IMG/VR virus record: IMGVR_UViG_3300028800_000001
Location: 62,001-126,000 of that record
Strand: one strand, 5' to 3'
DNA length: 64,000 nucleotides
Shown here: positions 7,833 to 61,237 of the stretch, in pieces
Layout: each line of letters starts with the position of its first letter
Numbering within the stretch: the first letter of the stretch is position 1
Program-made: the position numbers and the translations under genes
The notes under the pieces: generated by a model
What the model was told of the DNA's origin: nothing
What the model saw: the letters and a program-made list of their open reading frames with translations, nothing else
Database searches by the model: none

Positions 7833-7864
7833 CTTCTTTTCTCCTTGAATTTTCTTACAAGGGA

Positions 7865-13597: not shown

Positions 13598-14277
13598 TCT
13601 GGCTCTCCTAGTAAATTGACGTACATTTTCGTTTTCCTGTAGAACTCTTCTTTGCTTACCCCCTCAATTGCCATGCGATACTCTTCGATGAGATAGCGCT
13701 CCTTTAGAGCCCGATAAGTATCCAAGAGCACCTCTGGAAAATTGGAGGAATAGGCAACATTCGGAAGGGCACTGCGGTCAACAGGACCATACCCTTTTTT
13801 GCGCTCGTAGTAAATGGTCTCCCCAGGATGCACACTAAAAATCCCTTCTTCGCAGCGTATTGTCCCGAAATCTTTCTCGTTATCTCTCCAGTAGAGCGCG
13901 CCATCTATCTGATACCCCCAAAGGTTGAGAAAATGATCGCGAATGTACTCAAGCCACTGACGTATATATCCGCCGCCACTTGTACCATCCCACACGAGCG
14001 CATTCAAATCTTTATGATACTCAATATCGCACCATTCACTCGGCTGTCCAACAACAACTTCGTCATACTGCGGCCCACCGCGATCAATAAATGTTCCTGT
14101 AAAGTATGCACCCTGCACACCAAGTGGTAACCCAACTGCTTCGCGCAACGGATCTTTCCCCAGGTAGTTTTCGTCATGCCGTAAGTGCGAACGAGCAGAG
14201 AAGCTGTAAAGGTAATCAGATTGTGCTTTTGTTAGTTGCCCACGCAAATACATTGCACCATCATAGCGAAAGTCCAT
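13594..14277 (-). CDS. conserved phage hypothetical protein
   Basis: LPLGVQGAYF, QPSEWC, WDG motifs; AGGAGG SD. Confidence 0.8.
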   Translation of the reverse strand: MDFRYDGAMYLRGQLTKAQSDYLYSFSARSHLRHDENYLGKDPLREAVGLPLGVQGAYFTGTFIDRGGPQYDEVVVGQPSEWCDIEYHKDLNALVWDGTSGGGYIRQWLEYIRDHFLNLWGYQIDGALYWRDNEKDFGTIRCEEGIFSVHPGETIYYERKKGYGPVDRSALPNVAYSSNFPEVLLDTYRALKERYLIEEYRMAIEGVSKEEFYRKTKMYVNLLGEPE

Positions 14278-14309
14278 ACGCCCTCCTTTCTTTTTGAATT
14301 AATTATTTT

Positions 14310-14855
14310 TTAATTATTTCGTGGCTTTACTTTTTTAAAATTAATTAATTCTTGCACTTCTATGAAACGCCAGCGCAACCAGAGCACTGAGGCAACGTCC
14401 CATCCCCATAATCCTTCCGGTTCACTGTACTCTGTCGCATAAATACCCTTCCAGGTGACCGCAATACCGTCAAGACCAGCGCGTGCTGCTGCTTCAAAAT
14501 CAATCTTCTTTACATGAGGATCATAGCACTTCTTTAGTGGATAGGTTTGGGTCAGAAAGTGCAAATGCTCCTGGCTCTCAACGGTGTAGACACGTGCCTG
14601 CGGATCTGGCGTGAGTAACCAGAAACGCGCTAGACGCAGCGTGTTCAACTCATTTTCCTGCATATATTCTACCCAGGAAGAGGTCTCACGCGCTGCGTCA
14701 TATGGGGCTGTCCAAATTCCCCCTCTTGGCTTATTCAAAAAGCCATAACGATCATTTTCAATGGGCGCAAATAATTCAGGGATCACCTGCGCCATTGTTT
14801 TACTAACAAAGAGCTGCGGCTGGTTCCACATGCTCCTGGCTCTTTCGATAGGCAT
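14310..14855 (-). CDS. conserved phage protein (NKPxGGxWT family)
   Basis: NKPRGGIWTAP, IDFE, DGI, GWDVAS motifs. Confidence 0.8.
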   Translation of the reverse strand: MPIERARSMWNQPQLFVSKTMAQVIPELFAPIENDRYGFLNKPRGGIWTAPYDAARETSSWVEYMQENELNTLRLARFWLLTPDPQARVYTVESQEHLHFLTQTYPLKKCYDPHVKKIDFEAAARAGLDGIAVTWKGIYATEYSEPEGLWGWDVASVLWLRWRFIEVQELINFKKVKPRNN

Positions 14856-15150
14856 CCTGAAGCACTACGATAAGTGCTCCTGCCGTGATGCACAACGATA
14901 AGTCTTCTTGATCGTCAAGCGTGCCGAGCACTGCGGTGAGCTCTGGTTGGACGGTTGTGAGCACCGTCATTGGCCCAGCGCCTTCACGTGTATAAACGCA
15001 CCGATTGCTCGCCTTGTGGCCGCGAAAGTTTAGAACATCTCGGCTGTAAAGCATCAGGATATTTTGTGTAGGGTCGGAGAGATTGCGACAGGCCACCCGT
15101 TCTTTGGGCATTTTCTTTAACCAGGAGATGACATCAGTGTAGGTAATCAT
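14803..15150 (-). CDS. hypothetical protein
   Basis: GAGG SD. Confidence 0.7.
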   Translation of the reverse strand: MITYTDVISWLKKMPKERVACRNLSDPTQNILMLYSRDVLNFRGHKASNRCVYTREGAGPMTVLTTVQPELTAVLGTLDDQEDLSLCITAGALIVVLQDAYRKSQEHVEPAAALC

Positions 15151-15174
15151 GCAGTATTTTCCTCTTTCTTTCTC

Positions 15175-15246
15175 AATAAAATAAGAGCGGAAGAATATAT
15201 CTATTCGTTAATTCAAGGAGAATATAATATTTCTCCTTCCGCTCTT
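15175..15246 (-). ncRNA. candidate stem-loop sRNA/leader with anti-RBS loop
   Basis: Begins at P3 predicted +1; AAGAGCGGAAG/CTTCCGCTCTT stem, loop TTCTCCTTGAATTAA, T-rich tail. Confidence 0.5.
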
Positions 15247-15250
15247 TCTT

Positions 15251-15305
15251 AGTATAGCGCAGGCACGCTACAACGTCAAGGCTTTTTTCTCTGTATTTTC
15301 AGAAA
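15251..15305 (-). promoter_or_regulatory. promoter module P3
   Basis: TTTCTGAAAATAC...TTGACG-N17-TATACT. Confidence 0.85.
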
Positions 15306-15519: not shown

Positions 15520-15932
15520 TATACGACCTCACTGCGTGTAACCACGCCTTTTTGAATTTTGACATCCTCAACACTGTCGCCGCTTTCCCAGACGAAAAGG
15601 CCGTCCAGGTCTCCCTGAAAACTTTCAAAGAGCGGAAGCAGAATGTCAGTAAACATATGGCCTGAGCCATCAGAAGACCAGGAAAGCTCTTTGGTCACCA
15701 GTTGATTGTCTTCAATCACGCCACTAAGCGACTGACCTCCAAAGCCCAATTCCCAGGTTTGCGCTGCTAAATCAACCAGGACACGATTTTTGCCTTGCAG
15801 GCACCACTTTTTGCCAACGTTATCATATTGTCGCTTATCAGGCTGCTCACGTAACCACGCCTGAAAGTCAAAGGTGAGAGGAAACACCAGAGAGAGGGAA
15901 CGGATTCTGTGATTGCTAATGTTATATGACAT
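15519..15932 (-). CDS. conserved phage hypothetical protein
   Basis: MSYNI...GSGH...VWESGDS. Confidence 0.75.
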   Translation of the reverse strand: MSYNISNHRIRSLSLVFPLTFDFQAWLREQPDKRQYDNVGKKWCLQGKNRVLVDLAAQTWELGFGGQSLSGVIEDNQLVTKELSWSSDGSGHMFTDILLPLFESFQGDLDGLFVWESGDSVEDVKIQKGVVTRSEVV

Positions 15933-15934
15933 AA

Positions 15935-16627
15935 TTATTTTCTCCCATCAAGTACTGAGATCGCGTCATGATCATAAGTCAGAAGAAACTTCTGTATTTC
16001 GTCTGCACACGTTGGATATTTCTCTGTAAGGCCGCAAGCCAAAAGGACGGCCATTCGTTCACAATATAAAATTCTCTCCGCCAGGAAGTCGCTACGTATC
16101 TTTTCCCTATTTCTCAAAGCGATCCCTTTGTTATACCAACCTTCCGGCAGCATGGCAAGGGCAGTGATGAGCGTCTGCTCTAGCATTACAATACGTTGGA
16201 TAAGCGTTTCTGGGACGTGGTACTCACCCCTATTGAAGAACCAGACCAGCGTCGAGACAAGCATCTCTACCTGTTCTGCCACCGTACAAAGCACCGTCTC
16301 GTCAAAAGCGTCTTCTGCATTTTCTTCTTCGGTCATCTCTTCGAAACAGCGCCCAAGCATCCAAAATGATTCTTCTTTCGAATAAAAGACCATGCCGGTA
16401 CAGCTAAATTCACCCCATACAACGCCTGCAAGCGATTCCTCTTCAATACAGTTGCAGGGAAGAGAAGAATTGAAAGAAACCTCTGGATAGAGGAGCCAGC
16501 GTGGCATTGCTTTCACAATAGGCGTTGTTTGCAACTCATCAAAACTGTTTATCCAGAGGGTGAGCATTTCCCCGTTCACAGCGTGTACAATGCCAGATAC
16601 AAAGAACATTGTTTCTGGATCAATCAT
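15935..16627 (-). CDS. hypothetical protein
   Basis: ORF tiling. Confidence 0.75.
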   Translation of the reverse strand: MIDPETMFFVSGIVHAVNGEMLTLWINSFDELQTTPIVKAMPRWLLYPEVSFNSSLPCNCIEEESLAGVVWGEFSCTGMVFYSKEESFWMLGRCFEEMTEEENAEDAFDETVLCTVAEQVEMLVSTLVWFFNRGEYHVPETLIQRIVMLEQTLITALAMLPEGWYNKGIALRNREKIRSDFLAERILYCERMAVLLACGLTEKYPTCADEIQKFLLTYDHDAISVLDGRK

Positions 16628-17145
16628 GAGGCTGCTTCCTGCGAAAGTATTTCAAATTCACGATTGGCCCAATTAGGAATGCGGTACTGCCTGCCCTGTC
16701 CATCACGAAACTCCAGGGTCTTTTTACCCTTGACTAAGAAGGTGCCAAGCCGCTGTCCATTCTCAAAGAGCAGTGGCTCTTTAAAGCGTACAATACATCC
16801 GTTTGATAGTTGACGTAGTTTCTCGTTACGCGTACGACAATTAGCGCGCCAGTTTAGTGCATTCTCGCTCTCTGTCGGTGTGAGCTGATCAAGAAATCGG
16901 TCAGGGCATTCAAAGTAATATGGCCCCATCGTCTCATCCATATCCTTATACCCAAAGTTGTAATAATCTTTACTTCGGTGTGAAAGCAGGCACACCACCA
17001 CGAATACATCTTCTCTCCGCTTGCAGAGCAAATAGGCCACATGCAAACTAGATACGGAGTCAAGCACCTCAAACGAAGAATATTCCGCCTGAAAGAACTC
17101 CTTGATACTCATTCCTTTTTCTTTTCTGGTAAATGTCCACCCCAT
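16624..17145 (-). CDS. DUF6927-like protein
   Basis: MGW start, FGYKDMDETMGPYYFECP, ALNWR. Confidence 0.7.
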   Translation of the reverse strand: MGWTFTRKEKGMSIKEFFQAEYSSFEVLDSVSSLHVAYLLCKRREDVFVVVCLLSHRSKDYYNFGYKDMDETMGPYYFECPDRFLDQLTPTESENALNWRANCRTRNEKLRQLSNGCIVRFKEPLLFENGQRLGTFLVKGKKTLEFRDGQGRQYRIPNWANREFEILSQEAAS

Positions 17146-27823: not shown

Positions 27824-27867
27824 TTTTTCTTTCTCCTTGAATGTTTTCGTTTATTTCTTATACACGA

Positions 27868-27922
27868 ATGATACGTCATTCAAGGAGAAACGTCAAGTGT
27901 TTTTTCTATGAATATTCAGAAA
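27868..27922 (-). promoter_or_regulatory. promoter module P6
   Basis: TTTCTGAATATTC...TTGACG-N17-TATCAT. Confidence 0.8.
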
Positions 27923-28625
27923 TGAAAGTATTCAATTGCTCCAGCATATCTTGCTTGCATATGTCGAGCACATCACCTGAAAGATCTGCCAGCGGCAAGC
28001 TCGGAATGCGTGCGATAAACATGCGTGCCACTGGAACATATTTTCGTGCGAGCGATGCACGCCGCTTTTCGTTTCCAATGGCGTCTAAGAAGAGTGCGTT
28101 GCCCATGAAATCAGCAAGCTTAATTCTGGCTGCGCCATCATCCTTGATCAGCTCTTGTACATGCGCCTGATACATACTGTGCGTAAGCGCCTGATACTCA
28201 TCACGGTCTGCATACGTGATACCATGCGCCTGCAAGAGTGCGTCATAATCAGGATTGCTCAGCGCTGCCACCAGATTGCGTACCCGTATGCCAAAGTAAG
28301 ATTGCAGCACTTCGAGAGCGCTTTCGCGTATATTTGGAGCACCAGGACGCGCAAGTTTTGCGGCCTGATCTTCCACGCTATCATGTAGAAGTGCGGCAAT
28401 CACTTCATCAGCAGACTCACCAATAAGTTTGAGCGCAACTTCAAGCGGATGTTGTACATATTCGCTGCCATCAAAGCGTCGAGCTTGATCGCCGTGAAGC
28501 AGAATCATCAAGTCTAGCGCCTGCGTAATACGCAATTCGTCTTGCAGGCTGTACATCTTGATTTCTCGTAAAAACCCCTGTTTTCGATGCAAAAACGCGG
28601 GGGAAGCCCCTTCTAAAGCATTCAT
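27906..28625 (-). CDS. HD-domain hydrolase, RelA/SpoT hydrolase (Mesh1/SAH)-like
   Basis: HGDQARR, YVQHPLEVA, AALLHDSVED, IKLAD..N. Confidence 0.85.
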   Translation of the reverse strand: MNALEGASPAFLHRKQGFLREIKMYSLQDELRITQALDLMILLHGDQARRFDGSEYVQHPLEVALKLIGESADEVIAALLHDSVEDQAAKLARPGAPNIRESALEVLQSYFGIRVRNLVAALSNPDYDALLQAHGITYADRDEYQALTHSMYQAHVQELIKDDGAARIKLADFMGNALFLDAIGNEKRRASLARKYVPVARMFIARIPSLPLADLSGDVLDICKQDMLEQLNTFISEYS

Positions 28626-28689
28626 CTTTTTTCTCCTTGAATTAATTAATTATTTTGTAACAATTTCCAAAAACATTTTTCTAAAATTA

Positions 28690-28996: not shown

Positions 28997-29387
28997 ACCT
29001 ATTTCCTCCAAAATCATCAGGAAGGTCTTCCTCTTGTTCGATAAGATAGACCTCACTTAGCAGACGAATATTATACCAATATTTCACAGCTTTTAATCGG
29101 TGTCGCCAAAGAGTACTTGCCGCGCATTCGACACATAGTGCGGTCGGCATAATTTGTTTGCAAAAATCAGAATAAGCCATACAATGATACGTTGGTGCCG
29201 CAACAAACGTGTTATGCCCCGCACACCAGTTTTCCGATTTTTCCTCTACCAGTATTTCTTCTCGTGAAAGTTCAAGCATAAATGGGCTCCTCTTCAAAAA
29301 AGAAGCCATCGCTGTCTCTCCCGTTACAGCGTAGATGATGGCTTCTTTCGCATATAGTTTCCTTATTCTACCCGATCCCCACCACAC
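28989..29387 (-). CDS. hypothetical protein (start uncertain)
   Basis: ORF tiling. Confidence 0.55.
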   Translation of the reverse strand: MWWGSGRIRKLYAKEAIIYAVTGETAMASFLKRSPFMLELSREEILVEEKSENWCAGHNTFVAAPTYHCMAYSDFCKQIMPTALCVECAASTLWRHRLKAVKYWYNIRLLSEVYLIEQEEDLPDDFGGNRYE

Positions 29388-42468: not shown

Positions 42469-42669
42469 TTAGCGCTGTCCACGCGGGGCTTTTTTCGCAG
42501 AAAACAAGACCTGATCAAAGGCGACCCAATCGACATCCTCGCCCTGCTCTGGCGTACATCCACACCAGAACACGCCACCGGCTTTCGCTTGCTTCGTCAG
42601 ATCAATCAGCTCAAAAGGCTTCTGGCATTCACAACAGATCACCGTATTCTCTAACGTTACTTCGTTCAT
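42469..42669 (-). CDS. small Cys-containing protein
   Basis: TTCAAGGAG leader, first gene after P10. Confidence 0.7.
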   Translation of the reverse strand: MNEVTLENTVICCECQKPFELIDLTKQAKAGGVFWCGCTPEQGEDVDWVAFDQVLFSAKKAPRGQR

Positions 42670-42730
42670 CGTGCTTCTCCTTGAATTAATTATTTTTTCT
42701 TTTCTTGACGAAATTCATTTTCTAAAATTA

Positions 42731-42785: not shown

Positions 42786-42822
42786 AATAAAAAGAGGAGA
42801 GAAGATGTTGCACTTCTCTCCT
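42783..42822 (-). terminator. intrinsic terminator abutting P10
   Basis: AGGAGAGAAG/CTTCTCTCCT stem then CTTTTTATTTTT. Confidence 0.75.
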
Positions 42823-42840
42823 GAGATAAAGGGGGATGAG

Positions 42841-49111: not shown

Positions 49112-50395
49112 CTAATAACTATAGCCATCGATTTTGTACAACGACTGACAATATCTATAGCTAATTCCTTCAGTAACTCCGTTTTTCGTTGCAATATTAA
49201 AGCTTCCGGTAGAGCGTATTGCAACCTTTCCAATGTATGTACCCGTCTTTTTCCCTTTTGTGATAATGGCTTTTACGATGTCACCGGTTTGAAAACCATG
49301 CACAACCTTTGCTTGCTTTGGCCCTGTTCTTGGGAAGCCAAAGCAATTCATTCTGCACATTTGTCTCGATCCATGCCCAATAGCTTTTATATGCAAAGGT
49401 TGAATATCTCTAAGCGATAGTATTTCAGGGGTACTTTTGCCTACACATACCGCATCAATCCAATGTTCTTTTGAAAGTTGCCTCAAAGAACGATTGTATT
49501 TTGTTAGTCCACCAGAGCCAACTTCAACAGGCAATCCAGCTTTCTTTAATTCCTCATATAATCGCCACCTTGTACTATTCACCGCAGCCGCATCTTTGAG
49601 CGGCTTCTTTAGTTGCGCAAGAATCTTATCCAGTCGCTTCTTGTCATGTTGCAAGAAATCCTGAATATCTTTCGTGTCTTTCTTTTTATTGCATGGTTCG
49701 CAAGCCAAACAAAGATTAGAGATTCGATCCGAACCGCCCTTTGATCTTGCTACTACATGCTCAATCTCCAGAGGCACATTCTCAGCGTCACAGTAACCGC
49801 ATTTTCGCTCCCATTTTTCTAATAGGTACTCTCTAATCTCATAGCCTTGCAGTGTACCTTGTTGATATTCAAATCCTGATATTTCTGGATTTTCCATTTT
49901 TTGCAGATCAAAGCGAACCAATTCTTGCGAGATAGCAACAAGGTTGCAAAGCAATCTCAGCTTTCTCATCCACGTAAGGATATTTTGTATTCTGCTCTCA
50001 AGCGATGGCGCTATCCAACCTTTCTTCTTGTTCCTACGATTAAGAAAACGTGGCTGACGATATCTTGTTTTTCTTTGTCTACGCGACCTTCGAATCATTT
50101 TCCTATCGGCAAGCGCTTTTCCAATAGTGTTCCCACGATGTTCAAGTTCTACGCCAAAGACAACTTCACCCGACTGATCATTTACAATGGCGATACCGGT
50201 TGTCTTTGAACCAGGATCAAGCTTTATTCGCAATGGCTCAACAATTGGATTATTTACTTCTCGTTTTAAGACGATTGTAAACGGATATCTTTTAAAAACG
50301 GCTGCTTTTCCTGAAGAGAGCAATCTCCTTGCTTCCCCTGGATGTACCGGATTTAGAATCTGTTTCTTCGTATCTAATACAAACACTTTTAACAT
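49112..50395 (-). CDS. iscB: RNA-guided endonuclease IscB
   Basis: PLMP-like VFVLD..LNPVHPGEARRLL..YPFTI; RuvC-I LDPGSK; RRSRR bridge helix; RuvC-II QELVRFD; HNH EIEHVV..GGSDRISNL..CN; RuvC-III HWIDA. Confidence 0.95.
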   Translation of the reverse strand: MLKVFVLDTKKQILNPVHPGEARRLLSSGKAAVFKRYPFTIVLKREVNNPIVEPLRIKLDPGSKTTGIAIVNDQSGEVVFGVELEHRGNTIGKALADRKMIRRSRRQRKTRYRQPRFLNRRNKKKGWIAPSLESRIQNILTWMRKLRLLCNLVAISQELVRFDLQKMENPEISGFEYQQGTLQGYEIREYLLEKWERKCGYCDAENVPLEIEHVVARSKGGSDRISNLCLACEPCNKKKDTKDIQDFLQHDKKRLDKILAQLKKPLKDAAAVNSTRWRLYEELKKAGLPVEVGSGGLTKYNRSLRQLSKEHWIDAVCVGKSTPEILSLRDIQPLHIKAIGHGSRQMCRMNCFGFPRTGPKQAKVVHGFQTGDIVKAIITKGKKTGTYIGKVAIRSTGSFNIATKNGVTEGISYRYCQSLYKIDGYSY

Positions 50396-50645
50396 TTTTT
50401 GCTCTTTCAAGCCTCCGCTTTCGCGGGTAATGGTCAACTCGACAATGTTACAAAACGGTTTTGTATGATTACTACACTGGCTTTACCCTTCCGCCTGTTT
50501 AATAGTAATCCGCAGAGGATAAGACTGTTGAAGCATCCTATCGTGCCTATATATTCGCTTTTAACGTAGATTTTCTTTCAAATCTGAGTCTGGTCAAATT
50601 GGTGGGCTCTCACAAGCCCCTGTGTTTTAATCAGGGGTATTTGAC
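50396..50645 (-). ncRNA. omegaRNA (HEARO-type) scaffold
   Basis: GTCAAATACCCC...TTGACCAGACTCAG...CTACGTT...GGATGC...CTCTGCG...TTAAACAG...CATTGTCGAG directly upstream of iscB. Confidence 0.85.
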
Positions 50646-54992: not shown

Positions 54993-55038
54993 TTTCTTTC
55001 TCCTTGAATGTTTTTTTTCGTTTATTTCTTATACAGGA

Positions 55039-55093
55039 ATGATAGCGCATTCAGGGAGTGGCGTCAAGTGTTTTCTCTATGAGTTTTCAGAAA
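55039..55093 (-). promoter_or_regulatory. promoter module P14
   Basis: TTTCTGAAAACTC...TTGACG-N17-TATCAT; near copy of P6 and its leader. Confidence 0.8.
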
Positions 55094-56767: not shown

Positions 56768-57208
56768 TTACAGTTTCTCCTCATTGTCTACTCGCACACA
56801 ATTGACACCAGCCGCTTCAAGATATGCCTGCTGCGTTGGAAAGCCAAGTAAAGATATGCGAATATCATTATACGCTTTTTCGTAGTATACCATACTTATT
56901 CCAAAATTAATAAGGTGCTGGCAACAATGGACGCAAGGTGCGTGCGTACAATACAAAAAAGCGTCTCCCGTGTGCGGCCCCGCGAAAAGCAATGCGTTTG
57001 TTTCCGCATGCACACAGCGAATACAATGCCCATCATGCACCAGACAATTGTCCTGGGTGCAATGCGCCAGATGACGTGGCGCACCATTAAAACCGGTTGA
57101 AAGAATACGATCCTGTGCCACCAGGAGTGCGCCCACCTGCGCACGCTGACAGGTGGAACGCTGCGCAACACTGCGCGCCAAAGAAAGGTAATACGCGTGC
57201 CTATTCAT
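56768..57208 (-). CDS. dCMP deaminase (ComEB-like)
   Basis: RSTC.RAQVGA, TGFNGAP, HAETNA, APCVHC. Confidence 0.92.
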   Translation of the reverse strand: MNRHAYYLSLARSVAQRSTCQRAQVGALLVAQDRILSTGFNGAPRHLAHCTQDNCLVHDGHCIRCVHAETNALLFAGPHTGDAFLYCTHAPCVHCCQHLINFGISMVYYEKAYNDIRISLLGFPTQQAYLEAAGVNCVRVDNEEKL

Positions 57209-57783
57209 GCCGCTACCTCTTCGCATTCTTGATAAAGCAGATATTTACTTTGTGTGCGCTTGAGCATATTGAACACGGTCACCTGGGAGTACTTCTTCTC
57301 AAAACGTTTCGAAAGCGCTTTGGCGCACTCCGCTTGCGTACAATCAGGATGCTTCATACGGTAGACAATGAGGAAGTACTCATCGCGTTTCACCGTCGTC
57401 AAAAAGTGTTTGAACGTCTCCATAAATTCGATAGTTTCAAACGCGTCTTCTTCGTCTTGAAGCCACTCCTGGGCTCCTCCAAATTCTTCGCCTTCGACAA
57501 AGTCTACGCCACTTTCTTGCCCCTCTTGCAAAAGCGTTAAGCTCTCAATGCGTGACTGCTGATACTCTTCACCAATATAGGTGTTCATACGATTTTGAAT
57601 AGCGCGTATCGCATACGCAGCGAAGCCATTGCCCCGCTCTGGTTTATAGGTTCTCTCTGCCTCTACCAACGTAAGCGCGGCAACGGCCTCCAGATCTTGA
57701 TAATCATAGAGGCCGTTATATTTTTCTACATAGCGCTGGGCATGTTTACGAGCAAGAGGAAGATATTGTTCCGATAGTCTCAT
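57205..57783 (-). CDS. phage sigma70-family RNA polymerase sigma factor
   Basis: Region 2 YQDLEAVAALTLVEAERTYKPERGNGFAAYAIRAIQN; region 4-like TQAECAKAL..SQVTV. Confidence 0.8.
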   Translation of the reverse strand: MRLSEQYLPLARKHAQRYVEKYNGLYDYQDLEAVAALTLVEAERTYKPERGNGFAAYAIRAIQNRMNTYIGEEYQQSRIESLTLLQEGQESGVDFVEGEEFGGAQEWLQDEEDAFETIEFMETFKHFLTTVKRDEYFLIVYRMKHPDCTQAECAKALSKRFEKKYSQVTVFNMLKRTQSKYLLYQECEEVAA

Positions 57784-57843
57784 TCTATTCTCCAGAAAAA
57801 AAGTAATGGGCGTTTTTTCAAGGAACACCCGAAACCTGATGAG

Positions 57844-59969: not shown

Positions 59970-60009
59970 AAGAATACACCTCCTTTTTGAGATGATTTTA
60001 AATGTAAGA

Positions 60010-60061
60010 GAGACAAACGCGTAAGGAGTGCAACGATGAGTATTTGGTACGCGTTTGTCTC
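60010..60061 (-). ncRNA. candidate stem-loop sRNA/leader with anti-RBS/anti-AUG loop
   Basis: 14-bp perfect stem starting at P16 predicted +1; 24-nt loop complementary to AGGAGTGCAACGATGAGTATTTGG. Confidence 0.45.
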
Positions 60062-60065
60062 CTTC

Positions 60066-60117
60066 AGTATACCTGCTTTCGCAAGAAATGTCAATAAATT
60101 TCTAAGTATTTTCAGAA
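60066..60117 (-). promoter_or_regulatory. promoter module P16
   Basis: TTCTGAAAATAC...TTGACA-N17-TATACT (upstream box 2 bp closer). Confidence 0.8.
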
Positions 60118-60118
60118 C

Positions 60119-61237
60119 TTACCAGAGTTTGCCTGCCAATTCATCTTTTACCGTTCGTCCGTGGACGCCTTGTCCGTCAATCGGCATGCCATGCCCTACA
60201 CTTGCCAAAATTTCGTTACGCACCTTTTGGCCGCCAATATAGCTGACGTATTTCTTCATCTCAATAACGCGTGGATCAGCCAGTTCATTACGAGACACGG
60301 CAGGGTTGTCACCATACATATAATCGTAGAGCCGTTTTGTAAGCGGAGCGACAGCCACCCCTGGCCCTTCGAATACATCATCCATCTTAATTGTTTTGGG
60401 ATCAAACGGAGTACGCTTATTCTTAAAGACGTAAGCGACCTGGGCACGTACAAGTGCCTGACTCATGTTACGAATGGAAAGCGGGTAACTCTCGGTACGT
60501 GCGGCGCGTACATAGCCGGTGACCAGACGTGCAAAACTTTCAGGAACGCTGAAGGGTTTGGGATTCCATACCTTCGGTGGATCGAGTGCCGCCCATTCTT
60601 CGCTCTTGAAGATTTGGCCGCGCTCGTACTTGTCAGAGGCCATCTGGATTGCAACAGCAAGCTCTGTCTCATAAAGCGGATAATCAAAGTTGTACGGATA
60701 GAAACGCTGGCCTGTGCTTTGTGGGATTTTGATATTGCCGACATGCTTGTCGTCATTACTACAAAACATGATGCGGAAGTACTTATTCGCTTCAACGAAC
60801 ATGTCACCGGTCGCTGTCACACTGTCCTCATCCAATACGGTGTTGTACATCGTAATGCCGGAAGCATCTCGTGCATGCGTAAGCTCGTCAATGATGACAG
60901 CCGCGCCTTCGCTCATCGCCGTCGCGACGATACCGAGCACATCTTGCGTGCTGCCAGCAATCAGACGGGTACCAGCAATCGCTTTCGTTTTGGTAACCTC
61001 TGGACTATTTTGAAAGTAGTAAAGATTGCAGCCTACGCGCTCACAATATTTCGCCATAACGAGCTTGGCGAAGTGTGTTTTGCCGGAGCCAGAGGGGCCA
61101 ATAAGATAGGGCACAAAGCCCATATAAATGAGCTCCAATATTTCTTCAGCCCGTTCTAAAAGGTCAACGCCGGTAATGCCCCGCTCCTTAATTTTTACTA
61201 AATCAAGCGGGGTGAACTTCTCTGCGGTAATAACCAT
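60119..61237 (-). CDS. MoxR/CobS-family AAA+ ATPase
   Basis: Walker A GPSGSGKT, Walker B IIDE, FCSN, RF; adjacent to VWA gene. Confidence 0.88.
   Translation of the reverse strand: MVITAEKFTPLDLVKIKERGITGVDLLERAEEILELIYMGFVPYLIGPSGSGKTHFAKLVMAKYCERVGCNLYYFQNSPEVTKTKAIAGTRLIAGSTQDVLGIVATAMSEGAAVIIDELTHARDASGITMYNTVLDEDSVTATGDMFVEANKYFRIMFCSNDDKHVGNIKIPQSTGQRFYPYNFDYPLYETELAVAIQMASDKYERGQIFKSEEWAALDPPKVWNPKPFSVPESFARLVTGYVRAARTESYPLSIRNMSQALVRAQVAYVFKNKRTPFDPKTIKMDDVFEGPGVAVAPLTKRLYDYMYGDNPAVSRNELADPRVIEMKKYVSYIGGQKVRNEILASVGHGMPIDGQGVHGRTVKDELAGKLW

What the first reader, a model, noticed from the sequence alone, without database searches (positions are those of the whole stretch)
15175..15246. 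Candidate trans-acting sRNA whose loop is the exact complement of the shared early-gene RBS leader
Seen: P3 would start a roughly 70-nt RNA at about 15245 with an 11-13 bp terminal stem (AAGAGCGGAAG/CUUCCGCUCUU) and a U-rich tail. Its loop contains UUCUCCUUGAAUUAA (15208-15222), a perfect 15-nt complement of the mRNA leaders at 28631-28645 and 42675-42689. It also matches 10-13 nt of leaders at 7839, 27831, 45621, 48545, 54141, 54998 and 56220. All nine are the first RBS after a promoter module. An alternative inner hairpin (AAGGAGAA/UUCUCCUU) would hide the anti-SD, so it could switch. Inference: one phage sRNA silences a set of early genes through a common address, giving a translational timer for the early regulon. 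I know of no described equivalent.
Basis: partly seen in the sequence, partly recalled or inferred. Interest (0 to 1): 0.85.

Follow-up and report, generated by a model that had tools for sequence, protein, structure and literature searches.

The report
Hairpin leader after a phage promoter
A strong early promoter of an uncultivated 327-kb phage is followed at once by a 64-nt hairpin with a U-rich tail. The hairpin's inside is the mirror image of the ribosome-binding leader shared by other early genes, but it most likely works on its own message as a leaky stop signal and 5' cap, and a role as a free-acting silencing RNA is unproven.

Summary
On the minus strand, a consensus promoter module (-35 at 15279-15274, -10 at 15256-15251) is followed by an 11-bp outer stem (15246-15236 with 15193-15183). 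An inner 7-8 bp hairpin pairs AAGGAGAA with UUCUCCUU, and the tail has 6 U in 8 nt. Positions 15222-15208 are an exact 15-nt complement of the leaders at 28631 and 42675, and a 10-13 nt complement of seven more promoter-proximal leaders. This is far more than chance.

- The element lies in the 5' UTR of gene 15150-14803, which has no other promoter.
- The anti-SD core is paired in the ensemble; only GAAUUAA is free.
- The one close relative (L002) keeps a hairpin, a U-tract and UUCUCCUU, but its stem and loop flanks differ. No matching leaders appear in 14 kb of that phage.
- A more distant relative (L023) has neither the promoter nor the anti-SD.
- Another leader hairpin (60117) is conserved in position only, across four relatives.
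- The same anti-leader motif works in cis at 27889.

Best reading: a cis-acting leader hairpin, acting as a leaky terminator and 5' stabiliser within a PeSL-like cassette (about 0.5). A trans-acting anti-leader RNA remains possible (about 0.15), most plausibly for three cassettes rather than nine.

The parts
15282..15304 (-). A/T-rich upstream part of the repeated promoter module (TTCTGAAAATACAGAGAAAAAAG)
   Evidence: One of 17 module copies, 2 mismatches to the module consensus
15251..15279 (-). Sigma-70-type promoter core: -35 TTGACG (15279-15274), 17-nt spacer, -10 TATACT (15256-15251)
   Evidence: 10 of 12 matches; same architecture as the other modules
15244..15246 (-). Predicted transcription start (purines 5-7 nt after the -10). 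The hairpin therefore starts at or within 2 nt of the 5' end
   Evidence: Inferred from promoter geometry; not mapped
15236..15246 (-). 5' arm of the outer stem, AAGAGCGGAAG
15231..15238 (-). SD-like AAGGAGAA with no start codon after it; 5' arm of the inner hairpin
15208..15222 (-). Anti-leader UUCUCCUUGAAUUAA. The first 7-8 nt pair with the SD-like arm; the last 7 nt are single-stranded
15193..15206 (-). Small third helix (GAAUA/UAUUC) inside the large loop, predicted only
   Evidence: MFE and centroid structure
15183..15193 (-). 3' arm of the outer stem, CUUCCGCUCUU
15173..15182 (-). U-rich tail AUUUUAUUGA (6 U in the first 8 nt), resembling the TTTTATTTT tails of the phage's canonical terminators
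15160..15165 (-). Shine-Dalgarno AGAGGA of the downstream gene, unpaired in the predicted fold
14803..15150 (-). Downstream gene (115 aa, no known family). It is first in an operon that depends on read-through of the hairpin
28631..28645 (-). Leader UUAAUUCAAGGAGAA of the HD_4-domain gene 28625-27906; exact 15-nt complement of the loop
42675..42689 (-). Leader UUAAUUCAAGGAGAA of the gene that starts near 42667; exact 15-nt complement of the loop

Best explanation
The element is a cis-acting, promoter-proximal leader hairpin in the 5' UTR of the operon that begins with gene 15150-14803. Transcripts from the cassette promoter start at the foot of the stem. They fold into a Y-shaped hairpin: a 9-11 bp outer stem, a 7-8 bp inner SD-like/anti-SD stem and a small third helix. 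They then meet a U-rich tract.

A fraction of polymerases stop there and release a by-product RNA of about 70 nt. In this way a standard strong promoter is tuned down for this operon. It also offers a point where antitermination could act, although no such factor was found. Transcripts that read through carry a 5'-terminal stem-loop, which would protect them from 5'-end-dependent decay.

The anti-SD octamer is there to pair with the orphan SD-like sequence that the cassette places at the 5' end. Purine-arm/pyrimidine-arm hairpins are the usual style of this phage family.

Shown: the promoter consensus, the fold, the U-tract, the position in the 5' UTR, and the conservation pattern. Inferred: actual termination, stabilisation, and the reason for the anti-SD.
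For: - Position: the hairpin lies between a consensus promoter and the SD and ATG of a gene on the same strand, with no other promoter.
- Rarity: 14 of the 17 modules have short, unstructured, A-rich leaders. Only 15304, 60117 and 29418 carry a strong hairpin directly after the promoter.
- Ortholog L002 (70% protein identity): the same layout of promoter, hairpin, long U-tract, SD and gene, but with an unrelated stem sequence (GGGAAAGGUGAG with UUCACCUUUUUC). The structure and U-tract are kept while the sequence is not. T-tail scores are 2.26 here and 4.10 in L002, against 3.7-4.5 for canonical terminators.
- The 60117 leader hairpin is kept at the same place in four relatives, with unrelated stems and loops. 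This family therefore maintains 5' leader hairpins as structures.
- The 29418 module has a promoter-proximal hairpin with a strong U-tract (score 4.22) and no anti-SD.
- The anti-SD core is paired in the ensemble.
- The family's ordinary terminators are built from SD-like and anti-SD-like arms: GGAGAGAAG with CUUCUCUCC near 42800, and CCUCUCCUU with AAGGAGAGG in L028.
- The same anti-leader motif is clearly used in cis at module 27921.
Against: - The loop of about 42 nt is far larger than in the phage's canonical terminators, and the tail starts with A, so termination may be weak.
- The 7 nt GAAUUAA that extend the match to 15 nt have no partner in cis and are single-stranded. A purely structural role does not explain them.
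- UUCUCCUU is the only CTCCTT on the transcribed strand of the 6.7-kb L002 contig, and it sits in the orthologous loop. There it does not pair with an AAGGAGAA, which hints at a role for the octamer itself.
- No transcript data exist for this uncultivated phage.
Confidence: 0.5

Rival explanations
1. Trans-acting anti-leader sRNA. The terminated leader RNA of about 70 nt accumulates. It docks through the free GAAUUAA onto leaders that carry UUAAUUCAAGGAGAA, invades its own inner hairpin, and blocks the SD of a set of cassette-driven early genes.
For: - Exact 15-nt complement to two leaders in the window and a third on the same contig, and 10-13 nt to seven more, all promoter-proximal.
- A free 7-nt toehold, with an unpaired probability of 0.91-0.98.
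- Net energy of -14.1 kcal/mol for the perfect targets, against -8.5 for 16S-SD pairing.
- Target leaders are unstructured.
- The UUCUCCUU core is kept in the L002 loop despite a replaced stem.
- Precedents exist for attenuator-derived trans RNAs and for SD-targeting loops (PMC6614838, PMC11394854, PMC2790875).
Against: - The core is sequestered.
- The extension is not conserved, and no covarying leaders are seen in 14 kb of the L002 phage.
- The element is absent in L023.
- It is never free-standing and is always the 5' UTR of the same gene.
- It is a single copy with the same promoter class as its many targets, so neither delay nor excess is built in (inference).
- Energies for most proposed targets are marginal.
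Confidence: 0.15
2. Evolutionary by-product with little function. Cassette shuffling left an orphan cassette SD and an inverted fragment of a cassette leader between a promoter and a terminator-like stem. The complementarity reflects shared cassette ancestry, not RNA-RNA recognition.
For: - The modules are repeated, PeSL-like cassettes among ORFans (PMC2839356).
- Gene content around the element differs between relatives: two genes lie between the vWA-like gene and the promoter here and are missing in L002, and the promoter is elsewhere in L023.
- AAGGAGAA sits where a short cassette leader would put its SD, as in module 11329, but no start codon follows.
Against: - Flanks of the 15-mer show no further similarity to any cassette leader, so there is no trace of a larger inverted segment.
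- A hairpin with a U-tract and the octamer is kept in L002.
- The fold is much more stable than shuffles (z = -4.7).
Confidence: 0.12
3. RNase III-type processing site. The stacked helix of about 18 bp with a large asymmetric internal loop is cut. This separates upstream read-through RNA from the downstream operon and leaves stabilising hairpin ends, as at the intercistronic sites of T7 early RNA (established knowledge).
For: - Lower and upper stems are continuous on the 5' strand, 16 nt in all, with an asymmetric interruption on the 3' side.
- There is no strong terminator upstream of this module, so read-through from the upstream operon is expected.
Against: - The U-tract, which is conserved and stronger in L002, is not needed for processing.
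- The L002 hairpin is a single 12-bp stem with a poorly structured loop.
- The host and its RNases are unknown.
Confidence: 0.08
4. DNA-level operator. The inverted repeat AAGGAGAA-N8-TTCTCCTT at about +8 to +31 binds a dimeric phage or host repressor that blocks this promoter.
For: Perfect 8-bp arms with an 8-bp spacer lie just downstream of the start site. A related inverted repeat brackets the -10 of modules 27921 and 55092.
Against: - It is not conserved as a palindrome in L002.
- The arms are simply SD and anti-SD sequences with an obvious RNA-level reading.
- No candidate repressor was identified.
Confidence: 0.04

Closest known systems
PeSL cassettes (promoter-early stem-loop) of T4-type phages (PMC2839356, PMC4122927)
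   Same: Repeated intergenic cassettes among ORFan early genes. Each has a strong sigma-70-like promoter with an A/T-rich upstream region, a stem-loop terminator/attenuator and an SD. There are 17 copies in this window, several preceded by strong stem-loops.
   Different: - A different phage lineage, with no match in GenBank phages.
- In this copy the stem-loop lies after the promoter instead of before it.
- It has a very large structured loop.
- Recombination activity was not tested.
Promoter-proximal intrinsic terminators/attenuators that release short leader RNAs, some with a second job in trans: rnTrpL (PMC6614838), Rli51 (PMC11394854); the lambda PR'-tR' 6S RNA arrangement (established knowledge)
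   Same: A constitutive promoter, a short leader that ends in a hairpin plus U-tract, and a downstream gene that depends on read-through.
   Different: - No leader peptide, ligand-binding fold or antiterminator alternative structure could be identified here.
- The inner and outer stems coexist rather than compete.
5'-terminal stabilising stem-loops of bacterial and phage mRNAs (ompA-type; established knowledge)
   Same: The hairpin begins at or within 2 nt of the predicted 5' end. Related leaders keep a hairpin at that place while its sequence turns over.
   Different: Those stabilisers lack a U-tract. The start site here is predicted, not mapped.
SD-blocking sRNAs with pyrimidine-rich loops (RsaE and the UCCC-motif class, PMC2790875)
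   Same: A pyrimidine-rich anti-SD motif that could pair with the SD of many mRNAs and prevent initiation.
   Different: - In that class the motif is unpaired and conserved; here the core is paired.
- This RNA is phage-encoded, would target the phage's own early leaders, and is not a free-standing gene.
T4 RegB/RegA shut-off of early mRNAs through their RBS (PMC3014915)
   Same: A shared sequence at the RBS of early genes (GGAG followed by an A-rich run) serves as a common handle for post-transcriptional shut-off.
   Different: The effectors are proteins, not an RNA. No RegB-like gene was looked for or found here.

Membership tests
Intrinsic (Rho-independent) terminator / attenuator | Stable G+C-containing stem immediately followed by a U-tract | tested here: met
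   11-bp perfect stem with 6 G-C pairs, then 6 U in 8 nt. T-score 2.26 against 3.7-4.5 for the canonical sites
Intrinsic (Rho-independent) terminator / attenuator | Short loop (3-8 nt), so that the stem closes quickly | tested here: not met
   About 42 nt between the arms, partly filled by two inner helices. The consensus scan did not call it
Intrinsic (Rho-independent) terminator / attenuator | Lies between a promoter and the regulated gene on the same strand, and is kept in relatives | tested here: met
   Same order in the window and in L002, with a different stem sequence. L023 has only a weak hairpin plus T-tract and no promoter
Intrinsic (Rho-independent) terminator / attenuator | Measured termination, or an alternative antiterminator fold | not testable with these tools
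   No mutually exclusive structure was seen in the ensemble. Needs in vitro transcription or Term-seq
Trans-acting base-pairing sRNA | Own promoter and own terminator giving a discrete short RNA | tested here: inconclusive
   The promoter is consensus and the terminator is moderate. The unit doubles as the 5' UTR of gene 15150-14803
Trans-acting base-pairing sRNA | Accessible seed | tested here: inconclusive
   GAAUUAA is free (0.91-0.98). The UUCUCC core is paired (0-0.16). Opening costs 5.1 kcal/mol
Trans-acting base-pairing sRNA | Seed conserved in relatives | tested here: inconclusive
   The 8-nt core is kept in L002 but the 7-nt extension is not. The element is absent from L023
Trans-acting base-pairing sRNA | Target sites covary with the seed | tested here: not met
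   No leader in the 14 kb of L002-phage DNA (L002, L024, L028) matches the L002 loop beyond a generic AAGGAGAA. The sample is small
PeSL-type regulatory cassette | Repeated intergenic unit of a sigma-70-like promoter with an A/T-rich upstream region, a stem-loop and an SD, next to ORFans | tested here: met
   17 module copies. The flanking proteins mostly have no family
PeSL-type regulatory cassette | Stem-loop placed so as to stop transcription coming from upstream of the promoter | tested here: not met
   In this copy the strong hairpin lies downstream of the promoter. Upstream there is only a weak 5-bp hairpin
Any curated Rfam family | Score at or above the family's gathering threshold | tested here: not met
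   Nothing at gathering level. The best sub-threshold hit is STnc410 at 23.3 bits against a threshold of 50, in a 351-nt search
5'-terminal stabilising stem-loop | Hairpin at the extreme 5' end, with position kept while sequence drifts | tested here: inconclusive
   The predicted start is 0-2 nt from the stem. The pattern is clear for the 60117 leader in four relatives, and is seen in one relative for this element. The start site is not mapped

The most novel reading that the evidence does not exclude
A jumbo phage makes a leader-derived RNA of about 70 nt whose interior is an antisense copy of the ribosome-binding leader carried by one subfamily of its own mobile promoter cassettes. These are the AAUAAUUAAUUCAAGGAGAA leaders at 28645 and 42689 and a third in L016, with weaker matches to other cassette leaders. 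The RNA docks by a free 7-nt toehold, opens its own inner hairpin and shuts off translation of those early genes. That would be an RNA counterpart of T4 RegB/RegA, addressed to a cassette rather than to a gene.
Probability: 0.15. Interest if true: 0.75.

Novelty: new member of a known kind. Interest (0 to 1): 0.38.

Why it matters
If the cis reading is right, the element is an ordinary piece of phage gene control. It still shows how an uncultivated jumbo phage tunes identical strong promoter cassettes with leader hairpins. It also shows that the phage uses one anti-leader motif in two layouts, after the promoter here and around the promoter at 27921.

If the trans reading is right, it would be a virulent-type phage regulating a regulon of its own early genes through a leader shared by mobile promoter cassettes, using RNA instead of a RegA/RegB-like protein. 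That idea can be tested with a small set of reporter constructs without culturing the phage.

Tried and rejected
Searches that led nowhere:
- GenBank phages: megablast, blastn and tblastn with the region and two proteins found nothing.
- IMG/VR and JGI metagenome scans with the downstream protein returned only the source contig.
- Thirteen further contigs that carry the identical protein have an identical intergenic region, so they add no information.
- A full HMMER search of 1.84 billion representatives found only one more, distant homologue of the 115-aa protein.
- A scan of IMG/VR for the promoter module found only this contig.
- A 14-nt scan for the anti-leader gave only unrelated chance hits and was a wasted scan.
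- The search with the HD_4 gene was meant to recover orthologous target leaders for a covariation test. It gave one short contig of the L002 phage (L028) with a different leader, and otherwise bacterial chromosomal contigs.

Ideas considered and rejected:
- A mini-ORF in the hairpin. No ATG, GTG or usable TTG follows the SD-like site, only AUU/AUA, and L002 has none.
- Pairing of the loop with the gene's own SD. It is not in the MFE, and the net energy is +1.8 kcal/mol.
- Membership of the Rfam family STnc410. The hit is far below threshold.
- A plus-strand gene or promoter at the site. None was found.
- MAFFT alignment of the window and L002 leaders. It did not place the two octamers in register, so no covariance model was built from two sequences.

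Full report
**Source and context.** The window is bases 62001-126000 of a 327,295-bp uncultivated phage contig, IMGVR_UViG_3300028800_000001, also recorded as Ga0265338_10000021. Nearly all long ORFs are on the minus strand. Most predicted proteins have no family. Recognisable ones include a sigma-70 region-2 protein, an AAA_5 ATPase, an HD_4 protein and an IscB-like nuclease with its HEARO RNA. Nothing similar exists among 50,697 GenBank phage records, at either DNA or protein level.

**The observation.** Read on the minus strand, the intergenic region 15306-15151 contains the following features.
- A promoter module identical in layout to 16 others in the window: an A/T-rich block, TTGACG, 17 nt, TATACT.
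- An 11-bp perfect outer stem, 15246-15236 with 15193-15183.
- An inner hairpin pairing AAGGAGAA (15238-15231) with UUCUCCUU (15222-15215).
- A tail, AUUUUAUU.
- The SD AGAGGA (15165-15160) and the ATG (15150) of a 115-aa gene.

The fold is -24.3 kcal/mol, 4.7 standard deviations below shuffles. The 15-mer at 15222-15208 is an exact complement of the leaders at 28631-28645 and 42675-42689. It is a 10-13 nt complement of seven more leaders, each the first RBS after a module. Shuffles expect 0.21 matches where 7 are seen.
- The 8-nt core is complementary to 22 SD sites, including internal genes.
- Two internal RBSs reach 11-12 nt.
- A third exact target lies outside the window (L016).

**Why the leaders share a sequence.** TTCAAGGAGAA is part of the repeated promoter-leader cassette. 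Nine of the 17 modules carry it, whereas internal genes have AAGGAGAA without the TTC. The two perfect targets, the L016 copy and a partial copy at 14302 form a sub-type with the leader AAUAAUUAAUUCAAGGAGAA. The cassettes resemble the PeSL elements of T4-type phages in these respects (PMC2839356, PMC4122927):
- strong sigma-70-like promoters with an A/T-rich upstream region;
- stem-loop terminators and an SD;
- a scattered distribution among ORFans.

**Anatomy of the RNA.** In the ensemble the six core bases UUCUCC have an unpaired probability of 0-0.16, whereas GAAUUAA is 0.91-0.98 unpaired. Opening the 15-mer costs 5.1 kcal/mol. The inner and outer stems coexist, so there is no obvious switch. 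Accessibility-corrected pairing energies are:
- -14.1 kcal/mol for the two perfect leaders;
- -7.1 to -10.9 for six other cassette leaders;
- -2.4 for 56225;
- -8.5, for comparison, for a generic 16S 3' end on the same sites.

Pairing in trans is therefore feasible for the sub-type leaders and marginal for the rest. The loop does not pair with its own gene's SD.

**Terminator quality.** Canonical terminators of this phage have 10-14 bp stems, loops of 3-8 nt and tails such as TTTTATTTT, with T-scores of 3.7-4.5. The element has the same style of stem and tail but a loop of about 42 nt and a T-score of 2.26. This suggests partial termination.

**Relatives.** The 115-aa protein has only two detectable relatives among 5.8 and 1.84 billion sequences.
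- *L002 (70% identity).* The layout is the same: a canonical terminator, the promoter module, a hairpin, a long U-tract (score 4.10), the SD and the gene. The stem sequence is unrelated, and the loop again contains UUCUCCUU. That is the only CTCCTT on the transcribed strand of this 6.7-kb contig. The flanks of the octamer differ. In the 14 kb known from that phage no leader matches its loop beyond one generic AAGGAGAA.
- *L023 (distant).* There is no promoter and no anti-SD in front of the orthologue, only a weak 6-bp hairpin with a T-tract. The promoter and a long structured leader sit one gene upstream.

**Paralogous evidence from other modules.** Fourteen of the 17 leaders are 18-58 nt long and unstructured. 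Only modules 15304, 60117 and 29418 have a strong post-promoter hairpin.
- *Module 60117.* Its hairpin, in front of a 512-aa gene, is present at the same place in four relatives, with unrelated stems and loops and no U-tract. This is the signature of a structure kept for its shape, as in 5'-terminal stabilisers.
- *Module 29418.* Its hairpin has a strong U-tract and an SD-like loop rather than an anti-SD loop.
- *Modules 27921 and 55092.* At 27921 the same anti-leader sequence, UUUCUCCUUGAAUG, lies in the promoter spacer. Read-through RNA folds a 14-bp stem over the SD (z = -4.0), whereas RNA started at the local promoter is unstructured. This is the arrangement known for T4 genes e, soc, 49 and I-TevI (PMC3014915). 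Module 55092 carries a weaker version.

So this phage demonstrably uses the anti-leader motif in cis.

**Synthesis.** The most economical reading is a cis-acting leader hairpin. It would act as a leaky terminator that sets or gates expression of the operon from a standard strong promoter, and as a 5'-terminal stem-loop on read-through mRNA. Its anti-SD pairs with an orphan cassette SD. I put this at about 0.5.

Two observations are not explained by this reading, and they keep the trans model alive at about 0.15. The first is the free 7-nt extension that completes a 15-nt match. The second is the retention of the octamer in L002, where it has no AAGGAGAA partner. If the RNA does act in trans, the likely targets are the three sub-type cassettes rather than all nine. 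The mechanism would also be a variant of known classes: SD-blocking pyrimidine loops (PMC2790875) and attenuator-derived sRNAs (PMC6614838, PMC11394854).

The timer idea is weak as stated, because the RNA and its targets share one promoter class. Lesser rivals are a recombination by-product (0.12), an RNase III site (0.08) and a DNA operator (0.04).

**Limits.** There is no transcript data, the host is unknown, only one informative relative exists, and the start site is predicted from promoter geometry. The decisive tests are in vitro transcription, cis and trans reporter assays with compensatory mutations, and loop-leader covariation once more relatives are assembled.

Noticed in passing
window 49112-50645 (-): A HEARO RNA (Rfam RF02033, 136 bits, 50427-50645) lies directly upstream of a 441-aa ORF with RRXRR and HNH domains (49112-50437). 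This is an IscB-type RNA-guided nuclease unit inside a jumbo phage genome.
   Followed up: partly
window 27831-27889 and 54998-55060 (-): The reverse complement of the gene's own leader sits in the spacer of promoter modules 27921 and 55092. Read-through RNA at 27921 folds a 14-bp stem over the SD (z = -4.0), whereas RNA from the local promoter is unstructured. Translation would therefore depend on which promoter made the RNA, as for T4 gene e. The 55092 copy is weaker (z = -1.3).
   Followed up: yes
window 59970-60066 (-); L024, L025, L026, L027: The leader of the 512-aa gene starts with a 13-15 bp hairpin directly after the -10. Orthologous leaders in four related contigs all have a hairpin at that place, with unrelated sequences. 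A second small helix in some of them covers the SD.
   Followed up: yes
window 29276-29365 (-): Module 29418 is followed by a hairpin of about 50 nt with a run of six U and then the SD and ATG. This is a second promoter-proximal terminator-like element, and it has no anti-SD in its loop.
   Followed up: partly
window 7800-61400 (-): There are 17 copies of one promoter module, all on the minus strand, and five are preceded by strong canonical terminators. A sub-type (28743, 42784 and one in L016 outside the window) has -35 TTGTCT, -10 TATAAT and a 55-58 nt A/U-rich leader ending in AAUAAUUAAUUCAAGGAGAA. A promoter-less partial copy of that leader precedes the gene at 14277.
   Followed up: partly
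window 15627-15643: Inside the upstream 137-aa ORF, the transcribed strand carries UUCUGCUUCCGCUCUUU. It is complementary in 16 of 17 positions to the 5' arm of the hairpin (15247-15231) and lies about 390 nt upstream. In read-through RNA it could compete with the 3' arm. The match is borderline by chance (E = 0.07 in a small search).
   Followed up: no
window 27906-28625, 57205-57828, 60119-61237, 16624-17145 (-): Recognisable early-region proteins are an HD_4 domain protein (the family of RelA/SpoT-type hydrolases), a sigma-70 region-2 protein, an AAA_5 ATPase and a DUF6927 protein. The HD_4 gene is one of the two perfect 'targets'.
   Followed up: partly
L002 1900-1950; L028 1232-1270; window about 42790-42825: Canonical terminators of this phage family are often built from an SD-like purine arm and an anti-SD-like pyrimidine arm, for example CCUCUCCUU with AAGGAGAGG. 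Anti-SD strings in hairpins are therefore common in this family and are not in themselves a sign of a regulator.
   Followed up: partly
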